From Mytilus californianus (lineage: Eukaryota), in NCBI RefSeq assembly GCF_021869535.1, contig NW_026262734.1, forward strand, positions 101,370,001 to 101,434,000: a stretch of DNA of 64,000 nt, in the 5' to 3' direction. How positions within the stretch are numbered: the first letter of the stretch is position 1; every line of letters starts with the position of its first letter. This document shows, piece after piece, positions 10,939 to 38,932 of this stretch. The notes under the pieces were generated by a model, which was not told where the DNA came from, did no database searches, and saw only the letters and a program-made list of their open reading frames with translations. A program made the translations under genes and the position numbers.

Positions 10939-13900
10939 ATGCATAAATTTGTTGTCCTATGTGTCTTGGTTATAGTTTCAACTTGCATAGCACAGAAGAC
11001 AAAAGGACGACCAAAGATTGTCGTTAAACCTAAAGGTAAGACAACTATATTATGAACCTGAATCGCTAACCTGACAAATTCACCCGAAGTTGCTAACAAG
11101 AAAAAAGAACCTCTGGTAAATTGAAATTGAATGTCCTTGTTTTTATCAATCCCCAATGATTCGAAACTCACGCATTGTAGTTTGATAGAAGATTTTTGAA
11201 ATTGACCAATGAGATTCCAAAATTGAATCTGTTGGACACGTTTTTCATCCGATCAAATTTAAACGAGGATCTTTTGCAGAAGACCTTCTATCATATATCA
11301 TGTCCGCGAAGTTTGCTAAAATGCCAGACGCGGTTTCAGAGAGGAAGATGATAATGCTGAATGAATTCTGTACAGAAATATATGCGTTTCAAAAGTAGAC
11401 TTCACCTTCAATGAGTGTACGTGGTTTTGGAATACATAGCTGTTTCAGGACGTCCAAAATAATTCTGTCGAGGCTCTTTGATACTAACTTATTCAAAACA
11501 TGGTTGGAAAAAAGTAAAAGGTCATGCCGATTTATGATAATATTATTAACACTGAAATTGGTACTTTCCAATTCGGTGTACTGGAACTATTAAACAAAGA
11601 TATAAGTTTAATGACGAGTTAGAATAATATGTCTACTTTAAATACGAGTGTAGCTTTAAAATCTAAAATTATGATATTTCAGACAAATAAGAGAGATTCC
11701 TTTCTGCAATTTTTTAGTTTTGTTTTATTGTTTTTTGCTGAAACCAAAGGACGATTTTATGAATCCGTTCCACGGTTTTGGTCTTGTGATTCACCCGTTC
11801 AAAAGAAGGGAGTATATTGTTTTACCTCTGTCTGTTCGTATATCATTCCGTAACAATTGGGGGGGGTTGTAGTTTTTTTTTCTTTTCTTTCTCTGTTGTA
11901 TTTGTATTTGTTTTGTTTAATATTTTGTTAATTTTTTTATGGTTTATTGTTGGTGTTTTGGATCATTTTTTTCTATTCATTTAATTATTCATAATTCAAT
12001 GATGTAAATATTTTTAGGAATTTCAGTCAACACAGATATTGAGAAGTGTCGAACTTGTAGCCGGTATTTTAAAGGAGACAACAGGCAGCTGTGTAACAAT
12101 TTGTTTTGCAGTAGTAAGGTTTTAATGATAATCTTTTAAGAGTAACATGCATATATAAAATTTTGGATTGAAACAATAATTTTAAAAGATTATGAGTTCA
12201 GTCGCTTGTGAAACCATTCTACTTAAACTGGTCAGGGCTTTTGATAGGACGCCAGTTTATAAAGGCGTGGTAAGAAGTCACTGAATGGTCTCCAATAAGA
12301 TTTCCTATTTGAAAAATTATGTTTGTAAAAGTTTGGGGCATGTTAACGTTATGAGTCGTAAAATAGATTCGCAATTTTATGGACTCTATTCATAATGACG
12401 TTGATTTCGATAACTTGCTCTGTAAAAACTGAGATGCAATCGAGTATAAATCATTAGAAAAAAAATGAAAACAACACGTTATAAATTACATGCGTTTGAA
12501 GCGCTTTTCTGGATTTACCATCATCAGGAACGCTCAAAGCCGAATATTAGAAAGCCAAGGATGTATAAGAACCGAAGCAGTTGAAGAGTTGTATGACCAA
12601 AAAGGACCTAAAAAATTACCAAATCAATCTAAGGTCAACTTTGCCTGAGGGAATTGAAACCTTAGTTTCTTTATAATTTAAAATTTCATAAACGGACAAT
12701 TTTAGAAAGGTTTGTTATGAATCATGTCAGTACCGAAGCACTTACTAATGAGCTGATGATACCCTCAGGGACTACTAGCAGAGGTATCGAACCAGTGCTG
12801 TAAAAAATGAAAATAACAAGTTATAAATTTCATGCATCCGAAGCGCTTTTCTGGATTTACCTTCATCAGGAACGCTTAAAGCCAAATATTTAAAAGCCAA
12901 GAATGTATAAGAACCGAAACAGTTGAAGAGCTATATGACCAAAAAGGACCTAAAAAAATTACCAAATCCATCTAAGGTCCACTTTGCCTTAGGGAGTTGA
13001 AACCTTAGTTTTTTTATAATTCAAAAAATTATAGAAGTTTGGTTTGGTATAACCTGTATCAATTATAGCAACTAGATAGCAAATATTTCTATAAATGCAT
13101 AGTCTGTTTCTTATTTTCACAGAAGACAAAGCCAGAAAAAACTTGAAAAGTCCTCAAATATGCAGTTCGTGTACTAGAAAGTTTACAATCCTGAAGAAAC
13201 AACAGACGTGTAAGGAAGTTTTCTGTGCAGGACCTAGTATGTATAATACATTTCTGTTGATATGATATAAATGGCATATATCTTCATTTTACGGTTTGGT
13301 TTGGGATGGAGGTTTGAAACGCTCAATCTCAAAAATTAAAAGCCAAGGATTATGAGTACAAAACACGTAACGAGCTATATGACTTTAAACAAATGTAAAA
13401 AAAAGTAAATATATCTAAGGCCAATTTTGTCTGAGGGAATTGGAGACTAAGTTATCTGATAATGTCATAATTTATCAACAAATAATATAAGACAATTTTA
13501 TTATAAATCTTGTCAGTCCCGGAAGTGTATAATTTTTTACAATTATAACTAATGAGAATCACAATGATATAAAACATTCACCTACAATAGTAGTCACGTA
13601 CCTTTAGTCAATAAGGTTATTATCCTAGGAAATGAGAAAAAAAAATGTTGCTTGTTTGTTTTAGTTTAGATTCACTGGTTGCTCCAATTTTAGAAAATAA
13701 AATCCAAGCCTCAAATTATTCCTGACCGTTTTATATCATGCTAATCTATGAATGCAGCTTTAGATACATTATATTTCTCTTCAACAACACTTATCTAAGC
13801 TATAGGAATTGATTTTTTTTGTACTTTGACTGAAACACTGAAAACCGAAATCATATAGTCTCTGATTCGTTTGTTGAGTCTAGATATGTTGTTAGATAGT

Positions 13901-14815
13901 TGTTTAGTTATCCTCCTACAGTTTTAAAAATACACAATTAAAGTCTCAAACTATGATAATTCCTGACCTTTTAACATCATGCTAATATATGATAATTACA
14001 TCTTTAGACATATTGAATTTCTCAATTCGATTTCTTCAGCAACATTTATCTGAACGAAATAAATTGCATTTTATTTTACTCTGACTGAAACCCTGAAAAC
14101 CAAAGGCCTATGTTCTCTGTTATGCTGTTTAAATGTTATGTTAAAATAACTTTTGTAATAAAACTTTTCAAAACATTTGAAATTCGCATTATGAGGGATT
14201 TGAAAAAAACATAGTAAATTATGCGTGCCACTTGTGGAGCAGGATCTGCTTGTCCTTCTGGAGTACCTAAGAGCACCCCTTCCACAATTGTTTATATATC
14301 TTAGTGCAGTTAAGATGAATTATTCGACCAAAATTTAGATTTCTCATCTGTCACGTATAGGTGGTGCATGACGTATTTTTAAAAATGAAAATAAGATGGT
14401 ATAGTAAATTTGCCAATGAGAAAAATATTCACCAAAAAAACAAAGGGCATTGATATTATCAAATATAGATCAGTGAACGTCCTGAATTGCACATCACAGC
14501 TTTTTATTCACAAACTAATATACAGAAAATTCCTTTTAAACTATAATGAATAATAAAAAATAAAAGAAAAAAGAATTTAGTCAACTGTATTTTCACAAAA
14601 AGATACCAACACAGCTCAAAAAGAGCATGTGTACTGAAAAGTACAAATAAAGCAAAGAACACTGTATAAAGCATTGTTTTTATTCTGTTTTAGCAACAGT
14701 TGATCCTACCACCTTTCCCGCAAGAGCTTTGGCCTTTACAGTGGATATGCTATGTGCTTACTGCAGGGCTATAAATAATTATAATTGCCTTGTACACTAT
14801 GGTTGTCCACGGTAG
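10939..14815 (+). CDS. Gene A: secreted cationic cysteine-rich protein with three 4-Cys modules, 142 aa, join(10939..11035,12018..12113,13123..13236,14694..14815)
   Basis: All introns are GT..AG and phase 1, and the 429-nt join is open. Protein: MHKFVVLCVLVIVSTCIA-QKTKGRPKIVVKPKGISVNTDIEKCRTCSRYFKGDNRQLCNNLFCSKDKARKNLKSPQICSSCTRKFTILKKQQTCKEVFCAGPTTVDPTTFPARALAFTVDMLCAYCRAINNYNCLVHYGCPR*. The N-terminus is hydrophobic and signal-peptide-like. Paralog B has the same exon structure. Confidence 0.88.
12460..13030 (+). repeat. Dispersed/tandem repeat family R2 (GAAGCGCTTTTCTGGATTTACCTTCATCAGGAACGCTCAAAGCC), two tandem units in gene A intron 2
   Basis: Units start at ~12460 and ~12800. Other copies at ~13310-13500, ~53830-54060, ~20500-20830(-) and ~29400-29680(-). 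Confidence 0.8.
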
Positions 14816-15340
14816 ACGATTGTGTACCATAAGACAAACAAGCTAATCTTAAAATACTTTGTTTATAGTTCGTTAATCGTGGATAAAATTTATCTAAACT
14901 GTGCGGGTTTGTTATTATTTGTTTTAGTTTTACGCCATGTGCCGTCTTAATAGGCAAAGGTGGATCGGGGGAGGGGTATGGCCAATCGGATAAATATCTG
15001 CCTTAAGATTAAAGGACCCTCGAGGAATACAACTACAGGTCATTGGACCGTAGTCAAGAAAGAGAAAAACCCATAAGGTATATTTAGCTATAAAATTCCC
15101 GGGTAGCACATTGTGAAACAAACAAACTAACGTTATGGTCTAGGCCTATATGCAAAACGAAAAAACTGAATGAAAACTTTGTTAAAACAAAAGTCTTTTG
15201 AAGTCTTATATAAACGGAACGCACGTCTGGCGTGCCAAATTATAATTTTAGTATCTTTCAGCTCCCAAACTAGATAATATATTTTGTTGTTGCTATGCAT
15301 AATAAGTATGTTACTTATATGATTGTTAAAAAGCCTGCTC

Positions 15341-18300
15341 GTCAACTGCGTACAATGGGATGCAACTTTCATTGTACCTAATTGATAACGCCATGTACAA
15401 GATTTGCCTCCCTGCCCCCTTGCCCCCATTGTTACTTCATCCGGAGATCATTTTCCAGCCACATTTTATTATGTATTTGATATTTTTTTTATCCAATGTA
15501 AAATTAGAGAACTAGGAAACCTCCAGCTTATCTAAAGGATTTTATTCTATCTTCTTATGAAATGCATCAGTTTCCGACCTTGAAGATATTACCTCTGAAC
15601 ACATGGTTCAACTTCAGTCTTCTACACCAAAATATGAAGCAAGTGCTACCGTTCGTACAAAAATCCTACATCTACGAACATTGTGACATAACTGGACAAA
15701 CCAATTGAAGAATAAACAATTCAGATTAAAATATTGGAACGGAAGTTGTTGGCCGAACAACACGGGCTCTTTGTAGACAAGAAAACATCCGGTGTTGATA
15801 AAAAGACTTCAAGAATCAAAGCGAAGGACAATGGTAAAATTAAAATTAAAACATTAAAACTGGTAACCTTGAATCAGTTACGGGATACAGATAAGGTCAA
15901 CAAACAGGCTAAAGAGCTCAATCAGCACCTTTATAGATCAATCTTCAGATTCAGATTCTACTTCTTCAAGTGACAATGACGAGGATAAGAGTCAAGCCCA
16001 AATTAAAGGTAATGATTGACTATATGCATTGTTCAAAGACAAACAAAAACGTAACGCATTTTCGGGTGAAGCAAAGGCCGCTAAGGATCGGGTAACTTAC
16101 GATGTGTCATGGCCACATGAGCATGCCCAAACCAAATCAGTGAATTATTCGGATGAACACTTCGGACTCACACAGATTGTTAGAGGTGAAACATTTGACA
16201 TACATAACATAGAAGCCATAGCAATGCTCAGACAGAAGCATTTGATTAATCTGTTTTTTCTCGCCGGAAAATGGTCCTTTGCGGAGACAAAGGATTTTAA
16301 TGCCGTAGTTTTGCGTTCAAAAGAAGTCATAAAAATTGGTCTCATGTATTTTTAGAAGAACTAGGCCAAACTCTCCTTAAATTTTCATCTAAACTAACAG
16401 AAGAAGTACTCAACGATAAAGTTAATTGCAATCCCATTTGCGGCGCCTAATTATCAAGCGGAAAACTGTAGTCGTTCCGGGGATCATTTTGGAGCCTATG
16501 AAGACATGTTTGCAGGAAGTGCGTTCGTAAAGGCAAAGACTCAAGAAACTCGTCCGTTCGACATCCATTGAAGGATTGTCCGCATCATGAATGATGTTCA
16601 ACTTCAGTGCTACATTGTGCATCTGCTTAAATAATCAATAATTACATTCAGCATAATATCATGAAACCACCTGCTGTGCCAGGTGTGTACTATAATGAAT
16701 ATATCATTCGCAAAGAGAAATCATGTTCCTCTGGAAATGTGGGCGTGTTATTGTGTGATAATTTTGTGAAACCTCCTGCAATTCCAGATGTGATTGTTTC
16801 CCCTGATATTCAGGTGTGTACTTTAGTGAATTTACCATGTTTAAAGAAAAAATCATATTCTCCTGCAAATGCGGGCGTGCTATTGTATGGTCCTCAAAAT
16901 TTGTTTGGAATATCCTCTGCAAATAAGACAGACATTTTTATAGCAATATTTGTAATTTTGTGCTTAGAGTTGTGTTTATTTATGAAAATGATGCATATTT
17001 ACTGCAACCTTTATTATGTAGCACTGATTTTGACACTGTTATCAAAGATAACCATTGTTGTTGATGAAACTAATAATATACTTTTAGTTTTAAATGTTTG
17101 TCCTTGGTTTACGAAAACAGCAGGGTCTATAGACTATTTTCATATTACCGACTTTTTACTTAGAATTATATAATTTTTCGACCTAATCTGTGGTAGGACA
17201 TCCTGGAACTCAGTCAGGTAAGAGCAACCAAAAGAAGTAAAATTAAACATATAATCGGTGCAATTTGGGGGGAAAGTTTACTGTTTTCCGATTATTTTTT
17301 TGTGTATAGAAAAATATGAAACAGTTAATTTCCCCCGAAAATTCCACCGATTGAAAGCTTGATTTTACTTCTATACGTTGCTCTTACTTGGTCGAGTACC
17401 AGGATGTCCTACCAAAGAGTAGGGTATCTGTCGAAAAAATACTCCAGAGTCAAAAGTCGGTAATATGAAAATAGTCTACTGATTTTAAATATCGTTCAAA
17501 TTTAGTGAAATGGATATGAATATTTTTTCACGTGTTCGTGAAGCCGAATTTTAAGCATTCATGATTGTAAAATTCCAGTACGTTCTAATGTTTTAATATT
17601 CAATTTAGGGAAAACTTTTGGAAGATTATAGGACGGAATAAGAACATGTTGAATTTAGTACATCAACTATGGTGCTTGTGTATGAAAAGTAATGTTCAAT
17701 TGAGTGTGAGTTATATAGCATCTGTGGGAAATATGTTATCGGATTTGCTATCCGGTTAAAATCGGTCGGAGAAGAAGAAAACACAGTTCTTCATAAAATC
17801 TAATGTGTACAATTAAGATTTTGCTGAGAAAGATGTACCTAACCTAGTTACATGTTTAATGATGTCATCAATATCTAGGTGTGCATACATGATACATTTG
17901 TACTATTTTAGTATAATTAGTGATAAGTGTAACTATACTAACTAGTATTACATAGTTGTGTATCTAATTACTGTTGTCTTGTGACTTCCTGGTCTTTAGT
18001 CCAAAAGAGCAGTTTTACAGAAGAGGTCAAGCTTGCTAAAGGAGCAGCCCCTCGGTCTGGTATTTTTTCTAACCCGAAAAATCAACTCAATGCATACAAT
18101 ATATTTTGAGTGTTTTATAAATTTCGACCATTTATATTTTCCATTGTGTAAGGATGCCTTGTGTGCTAACGCAGGTTCTGTTAAAAACAAATATATCTGG
18201 CATGAGTACCTGGAGTCAACTGTTTGAGTTTGCTATGGACCTTTTTTTATCTACAGATTAGAAATTGAATTTAAGGGGATTGAGCCACAAGATTCAGTAT

Positions 18301-18717
18301 GTGGCCGTGTCAACATTGTCATTGTTTTACTTGACATTGTTAAGTTGTTGAATATATTTATGATTGTGTAGGTGCTTCTTTATGGCGTTTTCTAACGTTG
18401 GCATATTTCAATATGCTTAGTGCGTCGGATCTGGTCAGAAGCTCTCTGTCTTTTAATTTCCGGGGACAATTGAACAGGAAGAATGGTTTTGGTAGTCATA
18501 GGGCATCCTTCTTTTATTGAATTGGTCAAAGACTATACACGATCATGATTATGCACATGTTTTTTTCTTCTTCCCTATATTTGATTGCATTATTATAATA
18601 AAGCACCTTTCGCAAAACACTATTAGTTGTCGATTGCGTACAATGAGAGGCAACTCTCATTGTACCTAATTGATTACGCCATGTACTTGATTTGCGTCCC
18701 TTGTAACGTCATCCAGG
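15341..18717 (+). mobile_element. Tyrosine-recombinase retroelement (Ngaro/DIRS-like) remnant retaining ORF1
   Basis: 16029-16355 reads SGEAKAAKDRVTYDVSWPH...QIVRGET...RQKHLINLFFLA...FNAVVLR. This is followed by NYQAENCSRSGDH and HVCRKC...RHPLKDCPH (to ~16590), the gag-like and zinc-finger pattern of Ngaro ORF1. It is flanked by a ~100-bp imperfect direct repeat (15341-15446, 18629-18717). No RT or YR recognised. Confidence 0.6.
17181..17421. mobile_element. ~240-bp near-palindromic MITE-like element
   Basis: TGGTAGGACATCCTGG...GTAAGAGCAAC pairs with GTTGCTCTTAC...CCAGGATGTCCTACCA, with pairing over most of the length. Confidence 0.7.
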
Positions 18718-19603
18718 TTTTAGTTAACATGTGGTTTTAAGAAAGAAAGCATGTCCATGTTGTAATGTACTATTATATTATTTATTTATGTATTTCTCTG
18801 TGCTAAGTGTTCTGTTTGTACTGTATTCCTGTGACGTTGTGTTGTCATTTTAGCAAAATGTGTATGACCCCTCAACTAAAAGTTGGGGGCATATTGTTTT
18901 ACCCCTGTCCCTCCGTCCGTCTGTTCTTATTATTTACTTGCATAAAAGGTGCATAGGGTTTCCGGATTACTCCTCCTACAGTTTGAGTGCTAGGAGTGTT
19001 TTCACTTTGCTGGCTGTTTGTACATATATTGAAGGTATGCAGGTGGTCAGGGTTTTGATTTTAATTAATATTTGCTCTTTTGGGAGATAGTTGAAATTTG
19101 TCTTTTTTTGGAGTATATACTTGCATCAGAGGATAAATCCTCCTACAGTGAAAGATATACCTATGTGCTCTCATGCTCATCTTTGTGTATTTTAAAATAA
19201 CACTTTGCATCTGCTGGGGCATCATTTGTGTCTCCCAGACACCATTATATCTCAAAGCAAGTCCTACATTGACTTTGTTATAATACAGTTATTTCAGAGT
19301 GGAGTGCGGGGGCATCACTTTGTCTAGTTAACATTGCCATATAAGCGGGAGGTTTGGCTAGCCATGAAACCATTTTTTCTTAAAATATCCTGTGCCAAGT
19401 CAGGAATATGGCAGTTATTATCTACAGTCCGTTTCTATGTATGTTGGCGTTTGATTTTGTTGTAGTTCAGTGTTTCTATTGTTCCGTTGTTTGCCTCTTA
19501 TAGTTAATGTGTTTCCCTAATATTGTTAGCTTTATTAAGGTAGCTTTAAGATAATCTTCAGTGTCAGATTTATAAGCATAAACAAACTGTGTTTTTATTT
19601 AAA

Positions 19604-20010
19604 GGTCTCTTTGGTCATGGTGCATACCTATGTTCAAGGACTCTTCGGTCATGGTGAATACCTGTGAACATGATCTTTTTGGTTATGGTGCAAACCTGTG
19701 TTCAAGGTCACTTCGGTCATGGTGCATACCTGTGTTCAATGTCCAATCGGTCAATGAGTATACTTGTGTTCAAGGACACTTCGGTCATGGTGCATACCTG
19801 TGTTCAAGGTCTCTTCGGTCATGGTACATACCTGTGTTCAAGGTCACTTCGGTCATGGTGCATATCTGTGTTCAACTTGGTATCTTCGGTCATGGTGCAT
19901 CCCTGTGTTCACAGGCACATTTATTGACATGTAAATTAGTTTATTCAACAAACCTCGGTCATGGTGCATATCTGTGTTCAACTTGGTATCTTCGGTCATG
20001 GTGCATTCAT
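19604..20010 (+). repeat. Degenerate 34-bp minisatellite (GGTCACTTCGGTCATGGTGCATACCTGTGTTCAA), ~10 units
   Basis: The recurring core GGTCATGGTG is spaced ~34 bp apart, with some longer units. Confidence 0.85.
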
Positions 20011-21989
20011 GTGTTCACATGCACATCTATTGATGTGAATTAGCTTATTCAACAAACCCAACATTACAATTTCCTTTGCGAAATTATATACTAGTATCTA
20101 AAAACGTGCAAAAGCATGCGCCAAGTCATCTTTTAAAAAAGAGTCGGAAAATAATGAGAGAACCTTCAAAAATCGAAGATAAACCATTGACAAAAAGAAA
20201 GAAAAATGACAAAAAGACGAGCATGCCCTCAAAATACTATACAGAAAACTAAAGATTTAACAAAACGAAACCTACTAATACCGGGTTGAATTAAGGCTCT
20301 ATGGAAGGGTATATGCTGCTCCTGCTCCACAAGTGGCAACCGTCGTTAAATGTATTATTCCGTATATTAATCACTTTCTATAAATATCAATATTCCTCCA
20401 TATTCAACCTAAACGCACCAAATGTATAAAGTAGTATTTTCAATTACTAGCTCTAAATTCGGCTTATCTTTTCAGGTCTCTTTTGGTCATACGGCTTATT
20501 GCGTATTCGGGTTTTTATTCATCAACTTCTTTGAAATTTTTGATTTTGAGATTCATGATGAAGGCAAATCCAGAAATACTCTTCGGACGAACCAAAAACA
20601 TTTTTTTCCTTTTATGAGCAATGGGTCGATACCGCCGCTGGTTTACTGTTAGTCACCGAGGGTATCGTTCGCTCAGGAGTTTTTCGGTACCAAAATTTTA
20701 GTTTATTCGTTTGAAGTTCTTTTTTTGTCATATAGCTACTCACATATTTAGGTATTTTTTTTACATTCTCGCATTGAGATTTTTGGGTTTGCGCGTTCCC
20801 GATGAAAGTAAATCCTGACAAGCACTTTGGACGCACCAAATTTGAAAAGTATTATTTACATTTAGACCCGGTTTATGGTTGGGTTAGTGTTGCTCAGTCT
20901 TTAGTCTTCTATTTTGCGTTTTGTGTTCTGTTGTTTGTCTTTTTGTCATTTTTACCATGGCATTGTCAGTTTGTTTTCCGCTTATCAATTTGCATATCCC
21001 TTTAATTTCGTTATCAAGTGGTTTGAAAGAATTTGTCAACAGATATTTCCTAATTATTTATCAAGTTCATTAACGATATAAGTATTTTGATATAAAACAA
21101 GATACAAACATGATCAAATATGGTGCCGAATAGTAGTTCGTTCGATCCTGACACATAGCTTCATGGTAGGAACAGCTAGTTTAAACGATACTTTTCGTAG
21201 TCTACTACATGCATGTATGGAGTCAAGCTAGATTGTTATAACTTGGGTGTGAATTGTCATTAGAGCTACTTCGTAATTCCACCTGTGTGTTACTACTTTT
21301 TCGAGGAGCATTATTGCATTTCAGATTTTGATCCATTTTTTTTTTTAATTACGGAAGAGATATTGGTATATTGTAATGTCTTTGAGCTTGTAGTAGCATA
21401 TGTTATAGCAACTCGAACCCAAATCAAGATCATGGTCATGATTGATGATTGCCGGATCATCTGAAGTATTGTTGGGACCCGTAATATGATCATCTGAATG
21501 ATTATTGGGACATGTAATATGATCATCTGAATGATTATTTGGACACGTAATATGATCATCTGATGGATTGTTGGGACCAGTAATTACATTGAATTTTGAG
21601 ATTGGTTATTTAATGATTTTGATTAAAATAAGTAATAAGGGGTTCCCAAAGTAAGTGTGAAAAATAATACGTATTGTTTGAACAAGCTGTGTGAAAACAT
21701 AATAAAGATAAGTAATCTTTCAATTTTCAACGTCAAATCATTAAAGGTACGAAGTATGAAAACATAATTACTGAATTATAACATGTATAAGTAATTCAGA
21801 TATTTTTTTATTGCAGATAATTGTGCGAAAGGCAATATTATAAAATCCGATACGAGATGCTTAACTAAAAATAATTTATATGTTTACTAGTATCATAATT
21901 TGTTATTCTCAGCTCGGTTAATGTGTTGCTAATTTTGAAATATGCTAGAAACATCGGAAGCGATGTATATATATACAAGAAAAATTAAC

Positions 21990-28229: not shown

Positions 28230-28490
28230 CTTTTTCTGACTATCTTTACATGTCTTCTCGTGTCTTATTCGGTTTGTGTTGAATGAAAATGAGAATTCGT
28301 TCCAACATTTTCGACAAGGAAACTTTTTGTTGGTCAACGTTGGCTTCGAAAGGTTTTCAATTTGCAACAAAAAATGTTAACTCATTATTATCAACTTTTC
28401 CTTGACACCTTTTTTCATGACGATTTCTGTTTCTTGTATTAGTAAACTTTGTGTTACACATCTTACAGAAAGTATTATTGACCAAGTTTC
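28230..28490 (-). pseudogene. C2HC zinc-finger coding remnants inside the Polinton, upstream of pPolB
   Basis: After acceptor ttttcag the minus strand reads FCKMCNTKFTNTRNRNRHEKRC, then FPCRKCWNEFSFSFNTNRIRHEKTC in a shifted frame. Confidence 0.55.
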
Positions 28491-31250
28491 CTGAAAAAAT
28501 TAACAAAAATTAACACAAAACATATAACAACTTAAAAAAGAACAAAAAAGTGATGAAATTAAAATTGACGATTGTCTCGAAATGGATTAAACTATGGGAT
28601 TTAATATAACAGTGAATTACATGTACCTTTTCTTTTTTTTATGAATAAATTCTTCAATTACTGATAATCAGCAACTAAAATTCCTCGGACCTCTGCTGTA
28701 CAGATTCCACATTTTAACGTTTTCCTCTCTCCTTCCGTGAAATCTGTTCTTCTGCATGAAAAAGAACATCATTCCGATTCATTATGGAAAATTTCGTAAT
28801 CGAGTTCTGTTAAACTGTTATAATTGTTTTTTTAACTTTTTTTAACGTAAACCGATTTGTTTTTGGTTACTAAACCTTTAAAAAAACGAATAATCAGACC
28901 GTTAAAGCAAAAAATCATTTGCCCGTGTGTGAACAACTTATTACTTATTTAACAATTTATCATAAAATAATCAATCTCAGAATTCAATATAATTAAGGAT
29001 CCCAATAATCCTTCAGATGATAATATAACAGGTCCCACGTTGAAAATTGAAAGATTACATATCTTAAATATGTTTTCACACATCTTATTCAAACAATGCT
29101 TATTGTTTCTCACTCTTACGTTTGGAACCCCTTATTACTTATTTTAAACAAAATCATTTAAATAACCAATCTTAAAATTCAATCTAATTACGGGTCCTAA
29201 CAATCCATCAGATGATCATATCACAGGTCCTAATAATACTTCAGATGATCAAGCAACCATCAATCATGATCATGATCTTGATTTGGGTTCGAATTGCTAT
29301 AACGTATTCTACTGCTTGTTTATATGCATGATAATTCTGAATCATTATGAATAAGATTTAAGGATAAAAGATCATAGGAATATAGCACACAAATATAGGT
29401 CACTGCTGGTGGTGGTTTCCTCCTCGGGGCTACCTACAGCTCAGTAGTCAACACTTTTATGTTTTGTGTTATGTGTTATTATTGATACGGTCATAATTAT
29501 AAAGTAACTGTTAACAAAACTTTGAATTATGCGTAATACTAAGGATTTTTTGCCCTAGGAATAGATTACCTTAGCTGTATTTGGCAATATCTTTTGGAAT
29601 TTGGGTCCTCAATGCTCTTCAACTTTATACTCTAATTGGCCTTCTTAACTTTTTTTTATTCGAGCGTCACTGACGACGTTTTAAAAACATCCATCCATCA
29701 TCGTCATGTAATATTTACATGTATATGTATATTGTTCAAATGATGAATATGTTCTTGATAAAAAGTTAAACATTACTAATTTTTTCAAATTTTGCAGATA
29801 CCGAAAATTGATATAAAACATAAAATATTTGTAACTCAGCTTCCTTTGCATAGCAGTAGACAAATTCTGGATGATATTAACTATATAGTGTTTCAGAGAA
29901 AATATATTTCATATTTTTACACTATGTACCGCTGATAATCATGAACTATTGGCATAAAACAATTGATGCCGTCTCTATTATAGTATACCCTTGCTTTCTG
30001 AAGTCGATGGAATAAAGTGAGGACGGAGGACGTTCGGTCGTCCTTTCGTCTTCCCTTTCTCTTATGCATCCGTAACTACTTGACGACAAATGTTTGTGTA
30101 ACTTTCTCAGAATCTTCAGCATATAATAATGCCACGACTTTGCATTGCGGGAGAGTACCAATTTGTGAGCTTTGCCAAAAAAACGTATACTTTAGTTCTA
30201 TTCTAATATTAAACATATAAACTTTAAATGTCCTGTTGGAACGATTTTAACAATAGCATTGTCCTTACATAAACTTCACACTGACAAGAACCTTCTCAAA
30301 TTGCATTAGACAAGGAACATAGAATACCAGTTAAATATAAAATTTCACACGATATAAAACTAACAGTATTTAATTACAGTGGATACTTTGTCCAGAAAAT
30401 CAAACAGTACAATGCGTTTTCGAGTACACAGCGACGGGTAATAGGTGCTATGTACGCAGAAAATCTGGACTTCTTTCAAACGGAAGAATCATGATTTCCT
30501 GTTTGTTTGGTTTTTTTTTCTTCATTTTATCAGTGGAATAAATCTTTTTACAACAGATGATAAAATCATATAACTTCATATTTAATCAAAACAACTTATC
30601 ATAATCCTCATTACGTGTTGTGCGTAACAATAAAAAGTGCAATGAAGCAATTAAATCTTACATTTTAATAACATAAACGGAACCAATTTTTACTGCACCA
30701 GATGCGCATTTTCAACAGTTAATGTCTCTTCGATAATGCTCGGGGCCAAAATATTTGAAAATTTAAAATATAATACAAAAAATTAATGGTTGAAGAGTTG
30801 ATATAACATTGACGGTCGCTATAGTTCTCTAAAAAATCATTTCAGAGGACATAATTATTCACTTTAAAATTGAAGATCGGCATAACTTATATGAAAAACA
30901 TACAGGTTAGATTTGAGAATGATTATTTTGTTCAAATATTATTTTGAATCGTGTACAAAAACATCAGCAATAGAACGCTGAAATAAGATGATGATGATGA
31001 TTTGGACAATACAACAAAACCAACACAATCAAAATGCAATGTAAAGCATAAAATGGTCACAAAATAAACCAATACATTAAGAAAGGCAAAAAAAATAAAT
31101 AAAACATAGTCAATCAGTAAATGAAGAAAAACACGTCAAACCAAAATTAAAGCACTGACATTTTTCAATTTGAAGTTCAACAAAAATGATATTATTTTAG
31201 GTATATGCATGAAAACACAGGCTATCTATATACAATTATGAATAACAGGA

Positions 31251-31470
31251 GAGACCTAGTTGGCCGAGTAGTATTAGTAGTCACTACTTTGACAACACTG
31301 GTGTTGTGAGTTCGAGTGCGCTCGACTAGGAACTTAATTGACTATGATTACCATTGTTTCTACCGAGAGTCGTTGGTCCTATCCCAGTAATCCGGCTTTC
31401 TCCATAATGAAAACTTGCTGCCACAATATAGCCAATAGTGCTGAAAGTGGCGTTAAAATTCAACAAGCCA
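31251..31470 (+). mobile_element. tRNA-derived SINE (degenerate)
   Basis: A-box-like TGGCCGAGTAG, B-box-like GTGAGTTCGAGT, and a 3' tail GCCACAATATAGCC...GAAAGTGGCGTTAAA typical of mollusc SINEs. Confidence 0.65.
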
Positions 31471-33085
31471 TCCATTCATATAGACAGTATATCAGCAAAA
31501 GATGTTTACTAGTAATAGCTATAGTCCACTCGACGGAAAAGTATTATGTATACTCTTGAATTAATAAATACACAATGCAATTTGCCACGTAATAAATATT
31601 TTCAAGGGCATTTTATAACTCTTTTTAAAAAAGCTGATCGGCACTGATTTATGAACTTGTCAGAAAAATTACTGATATACACAAATTTAATATAAATTTA
31701 ATAAAAATCTGACAAGTATTGTGCACGTGAGAGCGCTTACAATTCAATTTTCCATATAATTGATATTTCATAGGTACATAACTGTTTATAAAATAGTTGA
31801 TCGGCACTGATTTTCGAATATGTCCGAGACATTGTTGATTTAAACATTTGATATAAATTTGACAACAAGCTGGCATTTCGGCCAAAATCTGGCAAGAAAT
31901 TATGCACGTGAGAGAGCTTACAAGATCCGGCTGACGGAGGACCGGACGGACGTCCAGTATTTGTATTCCACCCGCAAAAAAAGAAACAAAATCTGAGTGG
32001 ATCATATGAACTAAAAATTGAGCAAGAACGGCGCGTCGAAGGATAAGCGTCTCCTGCTATAAATGCAATAACATATATGCAAACAAAACACTATTTGTTA
32101 TAAGTGCGAGTCTGTGACTCTTTTTGCCTATAATCTCGTAAGTCATGAACTTTTCAGTATAACTTACGATCAACCTTAGTCCCAAGGTTTTTTTTTTGTG
32201 AATAGAACCCCTGAATATGGGTTTACAGAATAAAGCAAAATGGGCGAATACAATAAAGAAAACAGAAAATAGCAAAAAATAAAGAATAAAGAATTATTAT
32301 ACGGTGCTAAGTAAAAAGATACCCCCAACTAGTCCATACCATTACAAGTAAGTGTTGTTTCAAAAACTAAAATAGGAAACAAGTGTGACAATTGGAACGG
32401 ACAATACATCCTTGCTTATAAGTTATGACAGGGCACATTAAGTTATAAGTTATGACAGGGCACATTAAGTAGTACCATCCATTCTTATTATTTACATATT
32501 CTATTTAAGGAGGAAAGAATTTCAAAACAATTGAAATTGATGCATTGTGTCTCATCAATTGAACAATGGAAACATATCTGTTATGTCAGTATCTCGCCAT
32601 ATATTTTTTGCAATTAAAACCAAAGTAACAATAAAATATGTTCTCATCGCATGTAAATTTTTAGATTGTGCTTCAAGTCAAAGCGTGAATAATACAAAGA
32701 CGTGTGACCTTTGTAAAATGTTGTATTACGCACTTTCAGTTTGACCTTTTAGACCTTTGCCAGTGGTAACTATTGGTTGTATGCCTCAGTGACGGAAATA
32801 CAACGTCTCTAATTTATTTAATTTTTTTGGGGGGTAATCAGTCTTTCTTTTTTAAATTTTCATTTTTTGTATCAATTTGTACGTTTAAATACATGTATAT
32901 GTATACCTTTTCATTTCACTTTTGACAGTTACGAAACAATGAATAATACATTATATTATATTGACAAAACATGAACTCTTGTTCGCACTTAACCATCTAT
33001 CATAGTCAGTTTTATCTGTCTTAAACTGGTGTAAAAACAACTTCTAATTTACACACTATAACAACAAAATTATTGTGGACGCAAG

Positions 33086-36000
33086 ATGCAGCAATTCGTC
33101 GTCATTTGTTTATTGGTTATGCTACCAATTTTTATTGCTCAAGGAAGAAGGCCGAAGAATGGAGCTAAACAAGGTAAGAAGGCCTGATGTTTAGGTTCTT
33201 TGAAAATAAAACGCTCACATGACAAAACTTTTGTATTGCTGAAGAGAAATTAATTTCTGACAAATTTAACTTTGCCATCGAATGGCTTTGTTTTCATCAT
33301 TCCCCTGAAGTTTCAAAATTTTCGCCTTCGAGTTTGAAGAGAAAATATTTTTGATTAGCCAATAAAAGTACAAAATGCCTCTGGCAGACATGTTTGTTAT
33401 TAGATCGTAATCAAACGAAGGGCATATGTAAAAGGTTTTTTTACTAACTATATTCTTGCAAGGTTTGATTGAAATTGACCCATGCCTGTTTGTGTAGACA
33501 GGAAGAGAAATTGTGTTTTTCTATATGGTTTAAATGGGAACACTGTCGCTAATGCCAATGCAGCCATGTAAGCCATCTGACCAACATCAATGAGGATATC
33601 TCGTTTCTCAATTCATTTCAAAATAGCGTTTTATATATGTCTACAGTTTTGGTATCCTTACAATTCACAAAATAGTCACTGATAAGCAAACGTGAGTACA
33701 TGTACGAGAGGAAAATCATGATTTGAGCTCTGTCGGATAGAAATCGACCTTATGCAAATGCACGTATACATGTACATGTATGAGGCTTTGATTGATTTTT
33801 TAAATTCAAATACGAAATAAAAGATGACTTTTGGTCTGTTTTGTAGATTTTCTTACAAAAGCTCAATTTTCGAATAGTTACAGAATTTCAATAGAGATTT
33901 TTCAACGCGAAATAGGTTTACAGATATGATAAGTATTCATTTGCATAAGGTCGATTTCTATCCGACGTAGACTGGTTCCCGATCGCAATATTCAGTATGT
34001 TACACATATATATATACAAATATAACGTGACAGTGTATGGCTATCAGCTAATAGCTGCGGTCTTTTTCACAAAAAATCTTAAGAGTAAAAATACTCATAA
34101 GTAATACACATTTCAGTATAACTTACGATCAATTTTAATCGTAAGATTTTTTGTGAAAAGTGTCGCAGGAACGTAGTCACGGGAACCAGGATATATCAGA
34201 CGCGGCCCATTTGTTTACCTTTGAGTTAGTGTATTGGAAAAAAAGTGTAGTATCGCAAGGTTACACAGAGCATAAAAATACCGCTGTCCATTAAATGCTT
34301 ACGACGGAACTTGAGTACAAAATATTTAATATGTTACCATTCGATCGTTCGTTGATATATTTAAACGCATTGTAACATCCTGGAGGCATACACTCAATCT
34401 ATACATACGCGGCATAATTTAATAAAGAGGCGGAATATACCAAGGAAACATTCAAAACTCATCAGTCAAAGAGCAACTGTCAACGCCATACAAAAACAAA
34501 CGAGAGAATAAATGCGAAACAACAGACAAGTCCACAAAACACTACATATATATAAAACTAAAGTCCGAGCAACACGATCCCTACCAAAAATCGGGAACGA
34601 TTTCAGATGCTCCGGAAAGGTACGCAGATCCTATTCCACCCTTTATGTTTCAAGAAATATTAAGCTTAAGAAACAAAAGCTTTTATTTTTTCTAAGTGAT
34701 ACTGTTAACATTTAATATGTGCTATTTCTGAATGACTGTTTTGTGATACTAATTACAATTTGAGAATCCTGAGTACTACATGAGTAAGTATTTCAATGTT
34801 GTGTGCCTTTGGCAACAGAGTAAATTGTATGGTTTGAAGTACAGAAAAATAGAATGGAATTTTTCAAACTTATTACGTGCTTCAATGATGATTTACATCC
34901 AACGGTTCCTTTAAATCATGTGTGGTCAAACTTACATAAATGTTCGTTTAACATGTTTAAGAATTAAATTAGAAGAATGTCTAGTTTGAAATAACATTTA
35001 TAGTATAAACTAATAGTTAACGATATTTTCAATGCATTAAAAATTCCTTTGTAATTGTTTCGTATTTCTTACCAAAATCTTTTTTTTTTATTATTTGTTT
35101 TTTATCCTGTGTTGTTAATTATATATGTTGTATTTTTTAATTTTTCAGACACCCGGGCTGATATTAGAAAATGTCGTGATTGTAGACGATTCTTTAAAGG
35201 GGATAACTTCCAGCTGTGTCTAAAGTTATTTTGCAGCAGTAAGGTTTTACGAAGAAATAATATATAGATATAGGAAGATGTGGTATGAGTGCCAATGAGA
35301 CAACTCTCCATCCAAGTTACAATTTATAAAAGTAAACCATTATAGTTCAAGGTACGGCCTTCAACACGGAGCATTGGCTCACACCGAACAGCAAGCTATA
35401 AAGGGCCCCAAAAAATTACTAGTGTAAAATATGTATGGATTATTGCAATATGTTCTGCATATAGACATTGATAAACCCTAATTGCGAATTAAACAAACAA
35501 ACAAAAAACATTATAGGAAACATTTTAAGTAAACGTTTTAAAACCTGAAATAATAATTACATTTTGTATGATTAAAAGAATAGTACTGTACACGTATAAG
35601 AAAATTTCACTCAGAAATAATACGATTTTAATCAATTATTTGTTATAAGACTATAGGCATAAAATTGACTACAGTTCTAAGCTGTCAGTTTATTTTCGAC
35701 TTATGAGTTTGAATGTCCCTTTGGTATCTTTCGCCTCTCTTTTTTCTAATATATTGTGGTATACGAGTTGAATGGGGGGAGGGGGAGAATAAAGTTAATG
35801 TAAAGTATTTTTAAAAAACTCTCCAAGACTTGTCATTGGAATATTCAAGGAGAGGGGCGAAAGATACCAAATGGACATTCAAACTCATAAGTCGAAAATA
35901 AACTGACAACGCCATGGCTAAAAAAGAAAAAGACAAACAGGCAAACAATAGTACACAAAACACAACATAGAAAACTAAAGACTGAGCAACACGAACCCCA

Positions 36001-38932
36001 CCAAAAACTCAACAATCGCATGTAAATGAATACGAATGAAACTGGTTCATGGCCTCTATCTCGACGGCAAACTTATGAAGTCGTGATAACCTGTCAATTA
36101 TCCCCATTAACATTTATTATTCGACAAATTTGGAAAAATTCTTGGACATGCTCATTAAACAACCAAAAATATGGACAAATATCCAAAAGAGAGGCGAAAG
36201 ATACCGACAACGCCATGGCTAAAAAAGAAAAAGACAAACAGACAAACAGACAAATAGACAAATAGACAAACAGACAAACACCAGTACACAAAACACAACA
36301 TAGAAAAATAAGACTGAGCAACACGAACCCCACCAAAAACTTGGGGTGATCTCAGGTGCTCCGGAAGGGTAATAAGATCCTGATCCACATTTGGCACCCG
36401 TCGTGTTGCTCATGTTAGTACAAACCCGGGGATAAGTCTAATTGGGTAGGTCAAATTCGGGGAAAAGGGGATGGGATTGTAGTTACGTCAGTTGGAACAT
36501 ATCCGTCGTCATCTGTGAAACAGATATTCAATAACGGTCAAACAATCGTGATGGCGCCCGCTCAATTCATTACTTGGAACTCTTGATTTGATAACTTTCT
36601 AGTGAGCAGCTGCAACCCTCTATCAAGGAAATCATGATAGGAAATACAAGCCCTAGAATATCGTATCAACTAAGATATATACTCCGTATGTAGGCGCTGC
36701 TGGAATGTTGCTACATAGAAATGGAAAGGTCACAATTGGGAAGCTGAAATCATCTCTTTTGTCGTAAAGTTATGTTTTCAACCGACCTTCATCGTCAGTT
36801 TCTAGATGTAACTCAAGATATGAGGCATAAATCGAAAGTTTGGTATGTAACCATTGAGATGCAAATCGAATGTTTAAAATCGACTGCTAAAAATGATATG
36901 CAGCTGTATGATTCATTGCTTTGCTTTAACCTGTATCGATTCAGATCTAGTAAACTTATTGTCAATCTTTTGTTTGCATACGAAGATTTGTTTTATTTCC
37001 ACAGCTGACAAGACCAGAAAGAATTTGAAAAATCGTAAAAGATGCAACTCATGCACTAGGTTCAGAGCCCAGAAGAAACAACAGACGTGTCGGGAAGTTT
37101 TCTGTACAGTACCTAGTACGTAGACTTATTTCATTATTTTGGTATTATTGGAACACTAACTTCATGGTTTGTGGTAGGGGAGAGGCAGGAGTTCGGTTGG
37201 GAACTCAATGGGGAAATATACGCATACATGGTACGAATCTGATCTAGCTGGAATTAAAAAAAAATATTTTGAAAGGTTTTTTTTTCACGATTATAACTCC
37301 TGAAAATCAAATGAGATATGAAAACAGACACGTATTTTTTAATAAATTAGATTATATATAATCCTAAGAAAATGCTAACTTATTGTTTAAGTGATTGTAG
37401 TTTTAGATTGATTGATAGGTTGTTTTCTCAACTTCTGTCAATTTTAGAAACCATAATAATTGAAGCTTCCGTGTATTTCAGACGGTTTTATATCTTACCC
37501 GTCTTAATATTTTAAATCCATGCTTGAATACATGAAAAAATACTTGAATTAAAAAAGAATGTTATAAATAAAAAGCGTTGTAAAAGTGCAAAGATATTTT
37601 TTACACATTGTGACTTGGATGGAGAGTTGTCTCATTGGCACTCATACCACATCTTCTTATTTCTAAAGATATTTTATCATCTCTTTCCCTAATCAATAGA
37701 TATCCTAAACAACTCGAAGGTTAAGTAGTAAGAATATCTAAAGGGCTTCCGGTCGATTTCCTTTTGTAAAAGGGGTATCCATTTGAACTAAAGTTTTCAA
37801 GGAAAAAGGGGGTATCCATTTGAACTTAAGTTTTCAAGGAAAAAGGGGGTATCCATTTGAACTAAAGTTTTCAAGAAAAAAGGGGTATCCATATGAACTA
37901 AAGTTTCCAAGAGAAAAGGGGAAATACAAATTTCTAAGCGTCACAGAAAAGCAATTAGTCTAACACTTTTCCTCTGACACGTTTTAGTTTGAATAATAAT
38001 CACTTACAGAAATTGCTACATCTATTGCTATTTATTGAAGCAGAAGGTAGCATTTTATTTCGCCTCTACAAATTTTTGCACTAGTTTAAAGACGTACTTG
38101 CAATTTGTATTTCACTAGAAATACATTTTTGTTTCACAAAATTATATATTCGTTTTATATAAATCAATTCAGCTTCATTTTTTTGCTTTGAAATACTTCA
38201 CATTTCTTTCCCTGCCTTTACAGGCATAAAAGGCGCAATACCCCTCAGACGAGTTCAGCGCACTCCACGTGCGAGATGTAAGTGAGTTTGAAAAAATCAT
38301 ACTGTTTTATTCATATTTATTGAATTAAATTTGCATTTGCTATACAAAATTTGATGCGGTATGTATACCTTTTTTCTGTTTTTTTTTTATTTATTTATTT
38401 ATCTTATTGCCGGGGGGGGGGGGGGGCATTCTTAGGAAATCCTTGAACTTGTTTATGGAACAAACCAATGGAATTTTACCTAGTAGTATCTAATGATTCT
38501 TGGTTTTATGATTATAATATTTGTCACGTGCTGTTGGTATTCAGAAGGATTTTTGAAAAGCACATTGCAGGTTTTTCATTGCAAAATTACTTTTAGGCAT
38601 TTAATAAGCGAAGTGAGAACAAAATCCAGCAGTTGCATTGCTGGACCTTTTTTCTGAATGATCATGTTTCCATGATATAAAGTGTATATTAAAAGTGTTC
38701 ATACATCGTATAACACACTAGCACATAATGGCATAACAAAGCAAAGGAATCTGATATGGAACATTCTTAAATAAAAATCATAAGAGCAGTATTTTTTCAT
38801 TCTGTTTCAGCTTCTCTTGATCCAAACACCTTTACCAGAATAGCAACTGCTTTAACAGTGGACATGTTGTGTCAATATTGTAGGATTAGAAGAAATCGTA
38901 ATTGTCTTCGAAAGTTTGGTTGTCAAGGCTAA
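33086..38932 (+). CDS. Gene B: paralog of gene A, secreted cationic cysteine-rich protein, 136 aa, join(33086..33173,35149..35238,37005..37115,38811..38932)
   Basis: All introns are GT..AG and phase 1, and the 411-nt join is open. Protein: MQQFVVICLLVMLPIFIA-QGRRPKNGAKQDTRADIRKCRDCRRFFKGDNFQLCLKLFCSTDKTRKNLKNRKRCNSCTRFRAQKKQQTCREVFCTVPTSLDPNTFTRIATALTVDMLCQYCRIRRNRNCLRKFGCQG*. All 12 mature Cys align with gene A. Upstream, intronic and 3' UTR segments are also visibly homologous. Confidence 0.88.
36185..36775 (-). mobile_element. 5'-truncated Penelope-like retroelement (RT C-terminal remnant plus tail)
   Basis: The minus strand reads LYDKRDDFSFPIVTFPFLCSNIPAAPTYGVYI...GRHHD..DRY.ISVSQMTTDMF. 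Short tail fragments of the same family occur at 35680-35740, 35848-36010, 34440-34630, 20840-21000 and 26290-26400. Confidence 0.75.
37771..37920 (+). repeat. ~37-bp tandem repeat (GGGGTATCCATTTGAACTAAAGTTTTCAAG), 4 copies; 3 copies at 43690-43800
   Basis: GGTATCC occurs at 37774, 37811, 37848 and 37884. Confidence 0.85.

What the first reader, a model, noticed from the sequence alone, without database searches (positions are those of the whole stretch)
10939..38932. Cryptic two-gene family of secreted, highly cationic, tri-modular 4-Cys proteins (candidate undescribed host-defence peptide precursors)
Seen: two spliced paralogs invisible to the ORF track. Each has a signal-peptide-like N-terminus, a short K/R-rich leader and three modules: C-x2-C-x11-C-x4-C, C-x2-C-x11/12-C-x4-C and C-x2-C-x7-C-x5-C. 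Both have 12 Cys, and hand-counted mature net charge is about +17 (A) and +23 (B). Known: these spacings do not match the mussel Cys-rich families I know (defensin, mytilin, myticin, mytimycin, mytimacin, big defensin, CRP-I). Inference: CxxC paired with a Cx4-5C suggests disulfide-stapled helical hairpins, as in alpha-hairpinins or the terminal helices of saposins. A cationic multi-module precursor in a TE-rich, duplicating locus fits antimicrobial or toxin-like function. An alternative is a Cys-rich byssal/cuticle or shell-matrix protein.
Basis: partly seen in the sequence, partly recalled or inferred. Interest (0 to 1): 0.88.

Follow-up and report, generated by a model that had tools for sequence, protein, structure and literature searches.

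The report
Mussel-only secreted basic cysteine-rich proteins
Two neighbouring small genes in the California mussel genome encode secreted, strongly positively charged, 12-cysteine proteins known only from Mytilus mussels; one is already in public annotation as 'uncharacterized', and nothing yet shows that they are antimicrobial.

Summary
Two four-exon genes on the + strand, A (10939-14815) and B (33086-38932), encode 139/142-aa and 136-aa proteins. Each has a signal-peptide-like start, 12 mature cysteines in three 4-Cys units, and net charge +17 (A) and +23 (B). The window is Mytilus californianus. My B model is identical to RefSeq 'uncharacterized protein LOC127710758', so B is not cryptic. 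No A protein from this species is in the collection.

Both genes have 1:1 orthologues in the same gene order in M. edulis, M. galloprovincialis and M. trossulus; M. coruscus has B. An exhaustive profile search of 1.84 billion proteins found nothing else, and Pfam, PDB and the paper library gave no match.

Units 1 and 2 are homologous; unit 3 is not detectably so. Structure models are low-confidence all-helical. dN/dS is 0.1-0.24 for B and 0.4-0.6 for A, with no expansion and no hypervariable mature part, unlike classic mussel antimicrobial families.

Function is unknown. A secreted disulfide-locked polycation binding polyanions is my best reading, and a host-defence role is only a candidate.

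The parts
10800..10866 (+). Conserved upstream block of gene A (promoter or 5'UTR), 73-139 nt before the ATG
   Evidence: Near-identical to the block before gene B and before the orthologues in M. edulis and M. coruscus, although the coding dS between A and B is about 1.
10939..11035 (+). Gene A exon 1: ATG, signal-like hydrophobic segment, basic leader; ends in phase 1
   Evidence: aligns to exon 1 of orthologues P0008-P0011.
12027..12113 (+). Gene A exon 2 (4-Cys unit 1). An in-frame alternative acceptor gives a start at 12018
   Evidence: The M. edulis orthologue uses the acceptor that matches 12027.
13123..13236 (+). Gene A exon 3 (4-Cys unit 2, C-x2-C-x12-C-x4-C)
14694..14815 (+). Gene A exon 4 (conserved non-basic segment plus 4-Cys unit 3, then stop)
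32962..33028 (+). Conserved upstream block of gene B, 58-124 nt before the ATG
33086..33173 (+). Gene B exon 1 (signal-like segment and basic leader)
   Evidence: The joined B model equals P0001.
35149..35238 (+). Gene B exon 2 (4-Cys unit 1)
37005..37115 (+). Gene B exon 3 (4-Cys unit 2)
38224..38277 (+). Gene B cassette exon 3b: 54 nt, phase 1-1, Cys-free, polybasic, 18 residues
   Evidence: Matches the extra segment of the 154-aa M. coruscus and 152-aa M. edulis isoforms. It has AG/GT flanks and is conserved in all five species.
38811..38932 (+). Gene B exon 4 (4-Cys unit 3, then stop)
35730..41623 (+). Tandem duplication, unit 1 (holds B exons 3, 3b and 4)
   Evidence: Self-BLAST: 35730-40266 matches 41624-46134 at 94.3%, with further pieces up to 47076. 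No such duplicate is seen in four other species.
41624..47076 (+). Tandem duplication, unit 2. It carries copies of exon 3 (42926-43036), cassette 3b (44104-44157) and exon 4 (44677-44798), and has no exon 1 or 2
   Evidence: Copies of exons 3 and 4 encode the same residues as B. The public gene index lists a 136-aa product bounded exactly at 42926 and 44798.

Best explanation
A and B are old tandem paralogues of a Mytilus-restricted gene family.

Each makes a small protein of about 13 kDa that enters the secretory pathway through a cleaved signal peptide. It folds into a mostly helical body locked by six disulfides, two per 4-Cys unit, and carries a conserved excess of 16 to 27 positive charges.

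I think the protein works outside the cell as a whole molecule, not as a polyprotein cut into three peptides. Its likely mode of action is electrostatic binding to polyanionic surfaces. The leading candidate role is mucosal or humoral host defence, that is, binding to microbial envelopes.

In B, an alternatively spliced polybasic cassette between units 2 and 3 adds four more charges. It may also add a protease-sensitive hinge.

Shown here: the genes, splicing, conservation, charge, Cys pattern, taxonomic restriction and purifying selection.

Inferred: secretion, disulfide bonding, helical fold, polyanion binding, and above all the defence role.

My confidence is about 0.95 that the family is real and expressed in some form, about 0.6-0.7 for 'secreted disulfide-locked polycation acting by charge', and about 0.3 for host defence specifically. 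The number given is a compromise over the whole statement.
For: Genes and splicing:
- The gene models have GT-AG junctions and identical phase-1 intron positions in both paralogues.
- B equals RefSeq protein P0001.
- Orthologues keep the same exon sizes in five species.

Protein features:
- The 12 Cys are invariant. Net charge is conserved at +16/+17 in A-type, +21 to +23 in B-type, and +27 with the cassette.
- The first 18 residues form a hydrophobic core followed by small residues at -3/-1 in most members.

Selection and conservation:
- dN/dS is 0.11-0.24 for B and 0.40-0.60 for A, so both are under selection as proteins.
- Linkers between units are as conserved as the units, which favours an intact protein.

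Structure:
- Two independent AlphaFold runs place a helix-turn-helix over each 4-Cys unit.

Distribution:
- No relatives exist outside Mytilus among 1.84 billion representatives. Lineage-restricted secreted Cys-rich cationic proteins are typical of invertebrate defence effectors (PMC4558851, PMC5577615 abstracts).

Regulation:
- A shared, strongly conserved upstream block suggests co-regulation of A and B.
Against: - No expression or localisation data could be obtained, and no paper mentions the proteins.
- The family is single-copy, syntenic and under purifying selection, and the signal is not more conserved than the mature part. Mussel antimicrobial families such as myticins and CRP-I are multigenic, hypervariable in the mature peptide and subject to presence/absence variation (PMC7356231, PMC10138031, PMC7653742).
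- There is no anionic pro-region.
- The predicted helices are not more amphipathic than shuffled versions.
- Structure models are low-confidence, with pLDDT about 51 and pTM about 0.29. No signal-peptide predictor was available.
Confidence: 0.4

Rival explanations
1. A structural or redox protein of a mussel-specific secreted material. It would be a thiol-rich basic protein of the byssal cuticle or plaque (in the manner of mfp-6 or the Cys-rich mfp-16 to mfp-19 of the M. californianus cuticle gland), or a shell or periostracum matrix protein. It would bind anionic or DOPA-rich partners and cross-link or protect them through cysteine.
For: - It has the same general class of size, basic charge and about 10 mol% Cys.
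- Byssal proteins are lineage-restricted, single-copy and conserved within Mytilus, which fits the synteny and dN/dS seen here.
- Cys-rich proteins mfp-16 to mfp-19 were reported from the same species' cuticle gland (PMC9999432).
Against: - Tyrosine is scarce, 1 to 4 residues per mature protein, and there are no low-complexity repeats, unlike DOPA adhesives.
- The invariant, evenly paired Cys pattern looks like folded disulfide units rather than free thiols.
- The exhaustive search returned only entries named 'uncharacterized' or 'hypothetical'.
- The mfp-16 to mfp-19 sequences could not be obtained for a direct test.
Confidence: 0.25
2. A secreted signalling ligand or a processed peptide precursor (hormone-, pheromone- or growth-factor-like, heparin-binding type). 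Basic sites, especially those in the alternatively spliced cassette, would be cut to release one or more disulfide-locked units that act on a receptor.
For: - Strong purifying selection on B and 1:1 orthology fit an endogenous partner.
- An R-[KR] pair is conserved in linker 1-2.
- The cassette is polybasic in all species and contains a furin-like run in M. edulis.
- The most conserved segment of the whole protein is the non-basic start of exon 4.
Against: - With about 25% K+R, dibasic pairs arise by chance.
- The pair before unit 2 is missing in the M. californianus A protein.
- There is no amidation or other precursor hallmark, and no match to any hormone or growth-factor family in Pfam.
- The family is restricted to one genus, which is unusual for a signalling system.
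Confidence: 0.15
3. The C-x2-C ... C-x4-C units are zinc knuckles of an intracellular nucleic-acid- or lipid-binding protein, and the hydrophobic start is not a cleaved signal.
For: Weak sub-threshold hits of exon 3 and of A-type proteins to FYVE and AN1 zinc fingers. Very basic composition.
Against: - All hits are far below the curated cut-offs (10-16 bits against about 28), and the profile search of PDB found nothing.
- The N-terminus is a textbook signal shape in every member.
- The third unit has different spacing.
Confidence: 0.03

Closest known systems
Plant alpha-hairpinins and their multi-modular precursors (MiAMP2, Sm-AMP-X, vicilin-buried peptides)
   Same: A signal peptide is followed by tandem 4-Cys units of about 25-35 residues. 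The units are basic and predicted helix-turn-helix, with one module type repeated by internal duplication (PMC7191063).
   Different: The defining motif is two CXXXC pairs. Here the pairs are C-x2-C and C-x4-C or C-x5-C. These are animal proteins with no sequence similarity to the plant family. No evidence of cleavage into modules was found, and the fold is not established.
Conserved cationic Cys-rich mussel defence proteins (big defensins, mytimacins/macins, defensins, mytilins, myticins, mytimycins, CRP-I)
   Same: Secreted, cationic and disulfide-rich, in the same organisms.
   Different: No sequence or profile match of any kind. The Cys spacing and exon plan differ. The protein is about 120 residues with 12 Cys, it has no anionic pro-region, and the family shows no expansion or hypervariability.
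Thiol-rich basic byssal proteins of Mytilus (mfp-6; mfp-16 to mfp-19 of the M. californianus cuticle gland)
   Same: Small, basic, about 10 mol% Cys, Mytilus-specific, same species.
   Different: Very low Tyr and Gly. The Cys are ordered in fixed units.
Twin-CxnC helical hairpins (CHCH domain, small Tims)
   Same: Two cysteine pairs on two predicted antiparallel helices.
   Different: Those are intracellular proteins of the mitochondrial intermembrane space, have symmetric Cx9C or Cx3C spacing and are not basic. No Pfam hit. This resemblance comes from my general knowledge only.

Membership tests
alpha-hairpinin | Two CXXXC motifs, one on each helix (PMC7191063) | tested here: not met
   Spacings are C-x2-C with C-x4-C (units 1, 2) and C-x2-C with C-x5-C (unit 3) in all members.
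alpha-hairpinin | Helix-loop-helix fold with C1-C4 and C2-C3 disulfides | tested here: inconclusive
   AlphaFold places helix-turn-helix over each unit, but mean pLDDT is only 50.8 and 52.0. Coordinates and disulfide geometry were not available. Foldseek against PDB gave nothing at E<=0.001.
Saposin-like proteins | Match to the saposin domain profiles, with six Cys in the saposin pattern | tested here: not met
   No Pfam family at E<=10 apart from chance hits. No PDB sequence match.
Known mussel Cys-rich antimicrobial families (defensin, mytilin, myticin, mytimycin, big defensin, mytimacin, CRP-I) | Detectable sequence or profile similarity to a named member or its Pfam model | tested here: not met
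   The exhaustive HMMER profile search of 1.84 billion representatives returned only the two clusters of this family. Word-indexed searches returned only 'uncharacterized' or 'hypothetical' Mytilus proteins. Pfam gave none.
Known mussel Cys-rich antimicrobial families | Multigene expansion, with a hypervariable mature peptide against a conserved signal or pro region | tested here: not met
   There is one A and one B per genome, in conserved gene order. dN/dS of the mature part is 0.1-0.6 and close to that of the signal.
Thiol-rich byssal proteins (mfp-6, mfp-16 to mfp-19) | Sequence identity or similarity to the deposited foot-gland proteins | not testable with these tools
   The paper that describes them is not held. 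No held paper or supplement prints the sequences. No tool finds a protein by name.
Thiol-rich byssal proteins (mfp-6 type) | Tyr/DOPA-rich composition together with Cys | tested here: not met
   1 Tyr (B-type) or 4 Tyr (A-type) in about 120 mature residues. The mfp-6 composition is from my general knowledge.
FYVE / AN1 zinc fingers | Score above the Pfam gathering threshold | tested here: not met
   Best scores are 16.1, 10.2 and 9.3 bits against cut-offs of about 28. PDB FYVE hits have E of 0.11-1.3.
Midkine / pleiotrophin | Match to the PTN/MK domain profiles | tested here: not met
   No such hit for any full-length member at E<=10.

The most novel reading that the evidence does not exclude
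The family would be a new structural class of animal extracellular polycations. It would be built from tandem, asymmetrically stapled (C-x2-C / C-x4-5-C) helical hairpins, would have arisen within the Mytilus lineage, and would serve as a conserved (not hypervariable) arm of mussel mucosal or humoral defence. In B, the alternatively spliced polybasic cassette would act as a switch that lets the most conserved C-terminal unit be released by proteolysis.
Probability: 0.18. Interest if true: 0.6.

Novelty: new variant of a known kind. Interest (0 to 1): 0.4.

Why it matters
Mussels are a main source of new invertebrate defence and biomaterial proteins. Here is a clean, conserved, genus-restricted pair of genes with an undescribed cysteine framework, no Pfam family and no literature.

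If it is a defence factor, it would be an unusually conserved one next to the hypervariable mussel families. If it is a byssal or matrix component, it would add a folded, disulfide-locked polycation to that toolbox.

It also shows an annotation gap. No gene A protein from M. californianus or M. coruscus came back from the protein searches, so it appears missing from their protein sets, although the M. californianus gene is intact and its orthologues are annotated in three sister species.

Thousands of lineage-specific secreted Cys-rich proteins remain uncharacterised in mollusc genomes, so without expression data this is a candidate, not a discovery.

Tried and rejected
1. Exon-by-exon Pfam and PDB searches by reference gave only chance-level hits (DUF3377, DUF6811, FYVE). 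I rejected these.

2. Full-length Pfam scans of eight public members gave only Tra1_central, FYVE and AN1 at E of 0.14-1.6. Rejected.

3. A PDB profile search gave 0 hits. Foldseek of the low-confidence model gave nothing below E=4.9.

4. The hydrophobic moment of the predicted helices, tested against shuffles, was not significant. This gives no support for amphipathic membrane-active helices.

5. I considered that the two M. galloprovincialis A alleles (18 of 139 residues different, dS 0.13) signal balancing selection. I rejected this because neighbouring B shows the same dS (0.14-0.16) among the same genomes, so it is a regional haplotype divergence.

6. Global MAFFT intron distances are unreliable because of indels and were not used.

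7. The KGD motif in unit 1 as an integrin-binding site: it is not conserved in the M. edulis group. Rejected.

8. Paper searches by accession numbers, locus names and three short motifs copied from tool output gave 0 papers.

9. The mfp-16 to mfp-19 sequences: the paper is not held and no supplement carries them.

10. Rfam and tRNA scans of the window found nothing.

11. 'TE-rich locus': none of the ten longest ORFs has a transposon domain. The window holds many short interspersed and tandem repeats.

Full report
OBSERVATION

A six-frame regular-expression scan for the three cysteine patterns finds eight stop-free matches in the 64-kb window. All are on the + strand. Block-shuffled sequence gives 0.09 on average and never more than one.

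Extending each to splice sites gives two four-exon models:
- A: 10939-11035, 12018-12113, 13123-13236, 14694-14815.
- B: 33086-33173, 35149-35238, 37005-37115, 38811-38932.

Every junction is GT-AG. All three introns are phase 1 and interrupt the same positions in both genes.

I joined the exons as they stand, inside scripts only, to test the splice model. This gives proteins of 142 and 136 residues. Each has 12 Cys after the hydrophobic N-terminal segment. Net charges are +17 and +23, and the proteins share 79 of 142 identical positions.

HOW THE SEARCHES WERE DONE

The joined models have no reference, so they were not sent to any search tool. Exons were searched one by one by reference.

To reach full-length relatives despite the length window of the search for homologous proteins, I gave it a stop-free open frame of the window (42736-43041). 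This frame ends with a copy of exon 3, and I scored only residues 62-102.

That search returned public proteins. One of them, P0001, is identical to my joined B model. From then on, full-length work used public protein ids. The joined A model was never searched; its exons entered alignments as separate fragment rows.

WHAT AND WHERE

The window is Mytilus californianus assembly GCA_021869535.1, record JAKFGE010000008.1, with window position = record position minus 101,370,000.

Gene B is RefSeq 'uncharacterized protein LOC127710758'. Several transcript isoforms give the same protein.

B-type orthologues exist in:
- M. coruscus (136 and 154 aa);
- M. edulis (136 and 152 aa);
- M. trossulus;
- M. 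galloprovincialis.

A-type orthologues of 139 aa exist in M. galloprovincialis, M. edulis and M. trossulus. No A-type protein from M. californianus or M. coruscus is in the 5.8-billion-sequence collection. Gene A of this window therefore appears to be unannotated, although it is intact.

1. A exon-2 acceptor. The M. edulis A gene uses the acceptor that corresponds to window 12027, not 12018. The two are in frame and 9 nt apart, so the orthology-supported A protein has 139 residues.

2. Cassette exon in B. B has a 54-nt, phase 1-1, Cys-free, polybasic cassette exon at 38224-38277 with good AG/GT flanks. It encodes the extra segment of the long M. coruscus and M. edulis isoforms and is conserved inside the intron in all five species. 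It raises the net charge to +27. Gene A has no counterpart.

3. Tandem duplication.
   - Positions 35730-41623 are duplicated in tandem at 41624-about 47076, with 94-97% identity. Substitutions are 2.5% outside exons and 1% inside.
   - Unit 2 carries copies of exon 3 (42926-43036), the cassette (44104-44157, one residue different) and exon 4 (44677-44798). It has no exon 1 or 2.
   - The copies encode the same residues as B. The public gene index lists a 136-aa product bounded exactly at 42926 and 44798. This fits isoforms that splice B exons 1-2 to the duplicated 3' exons.
   - M. edulis, M. coruscus, M. galloprovincialis and M. trossulus have no such duplicate. It is either specific to M. 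californianus (or to this individual) or an assembly artefact.

GENOMIC CONTEXT

The order glycosyltransferase (-), KCTD-like BTB gene (+), A (+), B (+), NIF3 (-) is the same in M. edulis, M. galloprovincialis and M. trossulus. M. coruscus shows B followed by NIF3.

In the window, the KCTD-like ORF is at 6571-7263 and NIF3 starts near 49321 on the - strand. This is a stable locus, not a generally duplicating one.

None of the ten longest ORFs carries a transposon domain. Short interspersed and tandem repeats are common.

FAMILY LIMITS

I built a profile from five B-type proteins plus the four A exons and ran it with HMMER against all 1.84 billion cluster representatives. It found two clusters, the B-type and the A-type, and nothing else at E<=0.001.

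Other searches also came back empty:
- Pfam gives no family for exons or full-length members. The best chance hits are FYVE at 16 bits against a cut-off of 27.8, plus AN1 and Tra1_central.
- PDB sequence and profile searches give nothing meaningful.
- No held paper contains the accessions, locus names or three short motifs.

As far as annotated proteins show, the family is confined to the genus Mytilus. Absence elsewhere is tentative, because genes with such short exons are easily missed. Gene A in two Mytilus annotations is an example.

ARCHITECTURE

Profile-profile comparison shows that units 1 and 2 (exons 2 and 3) are homologous over their whole length (probability 87%, E 4e-6). That points to an internal duplication of a symmetric phase-1 exon.

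Unit 3 (exon 4) shows no similarity to either unit beyond the C-x2-C pair. Its N-terminal, non-basic half is the best-conserved stretch between A and B.

Two AlphaFold2 runs, one on B from M. californianus and one on A from M. galloprovincialis, give all-helical models with a helix-turn-helix over each unit. Confidence is low: mean pLDDT 50.8 and 52.0, pTM about 0.29. Foldseek against PDB finds nothing.

The disulfide-stapled helical-hairpin idea is therefore plausible but unproven. The defining CXXXC/CXXXC motif of alpha-hairpinins (PMC7191063) is not met.

The predicted helices are not more amphipathic than shuffled versions.

EVOLUTION

- A versus B: dS is about 1 and dN/dS is 0.30, so the duplication is old. 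It predates the split of the M. californianus/coruscus and M. edulis groups, because both paralogues occur in both groups.
- B orthologues: dN/dS 0.11-0.24.
- A orthologues: dN/dS 0.40-0.60.
- The signal segment is not more conserved than the mature part.
- The 12 Cys and the high charge are invariant.

This is purifying selection on a folded, charged protein. It is not the pattern of hypervariable mature peptide, multigene expansion and presence/absence variation described for myticins and CRP-I (PMC7356231, PMC10138031, PMC7653742).

The linkers between units are conserved. The only constant basic pair is an R-[KR] in linker 1-2. In a protein with 25% K+R this is weak evidence for processing. 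The cassette is the only place with a furin-like run, and that is seen in M. edulis.

REGULATION

About 200 nt upstream of the ATG is strongly conserved between A and B and across species. It has a near-identical 67-nt core at 10800-10866 and 32962-33028, even though synonymous sites between A and B are saturated. This suggests shared cis-regulation.

The core holds one or two GATA-like motifs on the opposite strand. That is my reading of the alignment and I did not test it.

INTERPRETATION

Established:
- a real family of two tandem genes;
- restricted to Mytilus as far as annotated proteins show;
- under selective constraint.

Inferred from the sequence:
- small secreted proteins;
- Cys-locked by disulfides, with the high positive charge itself measured directly.

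Its biochemical mode is most simply that of a disulfide-stabilised polycation binding polyanionic partners as an intact protein.

Which partners it binds is open. My rough weights are:
- host defence: about 0.3, the leading candidate;
- a byssal, cuticle or shell matrix role: about 0.25. The composition argues against a DOPA adhesive, and mfp-16 to mfp-19 could not be compared;
- a processed signalling precursor: about 0.15;
- an intracellular zinc-finger reading: unlikely.

Its functional label is only a hypothesis, and 'cryptic' and 'duplicating' are overstated.

- There are no N runs in the window.
- Joined exon models were built only inside scripts, kept in /scratch and printed for checking. 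They were not sent to search tools.
- Short DNA anchors in scripts and three 5-6-letter motifs in one paper search were copied from tool output.
- One slip: early in my own reasoning I began to recall a comparator pheromone peptide (Aplysia attractin) letter by letter from memory.

Noticed in passing
window 10800-10866 and 32962-33028 (also L003, L004, L005 about 60-140 nt before each ATG): A 67-nt core upstream of both paralogues is almost identical between A and B and across species, although their synonymous sites are saturated. It contains GATA-like motifs on the opposite strand and is probably a shared promoter or 5'UTR element.
   Followed up: partly
window 35730-47076: A clean 5.9-kb tandem duplication with units abutting at 41623/41624. 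It is absent from four other Mytilus assemblies. It may be a real recent or polymorphic duplication giving alternative 3' exons, or a haplotype assembly artefact.
   Followed up: partly
window 6571-7263 (+): An ORF with a BTB_2 (KCTD-type) domain, E 2.6e-7. It corresponds to the 260-aa BTB_2 gene that sits upstream of gene A in M. edulis, M. galloprovincialis and M. trossulus.
   Followed up: partly
window about 49321-54798 and beyond (-): A NIF3 (DUF34_NIF3) gene of 353 residues lies downstream of B on the opposite strand, as in the other species.
   Followed up: no
window 61555-62121 (+): An ORF with a borderline CG-1 (CAMTA-type DNA-binding) domain hit, 23.1 bits against a cut-off of 23.5. 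It lies among 188-bp tandem and inverted repeat arrays at 60090-62693.
   Followed up: no
window 19602-20058 and 37768-37921 / 43687-43802: Minisatellites: a 34-nt unit with 9 copies, overlapped by a 137-aa ORF with only a spurious Pfam hit, and a 36-37-nt unit inside B intron 3 and its duplicate, with different copy numbers (4.2 against 3.2).
   Followed up: no
L006 versus L007 (M. galloprovincialis gene A, two assemblies): The two M. galloprovincialis assemblies carry A alleles differing at 18 of 139 residues (dS 0.13). One allele is nearly identical to M. edulis. Neighbouring B shows the same depth of divergence, so this is a regional haplotype or introgression effect.
   Followed up: yes
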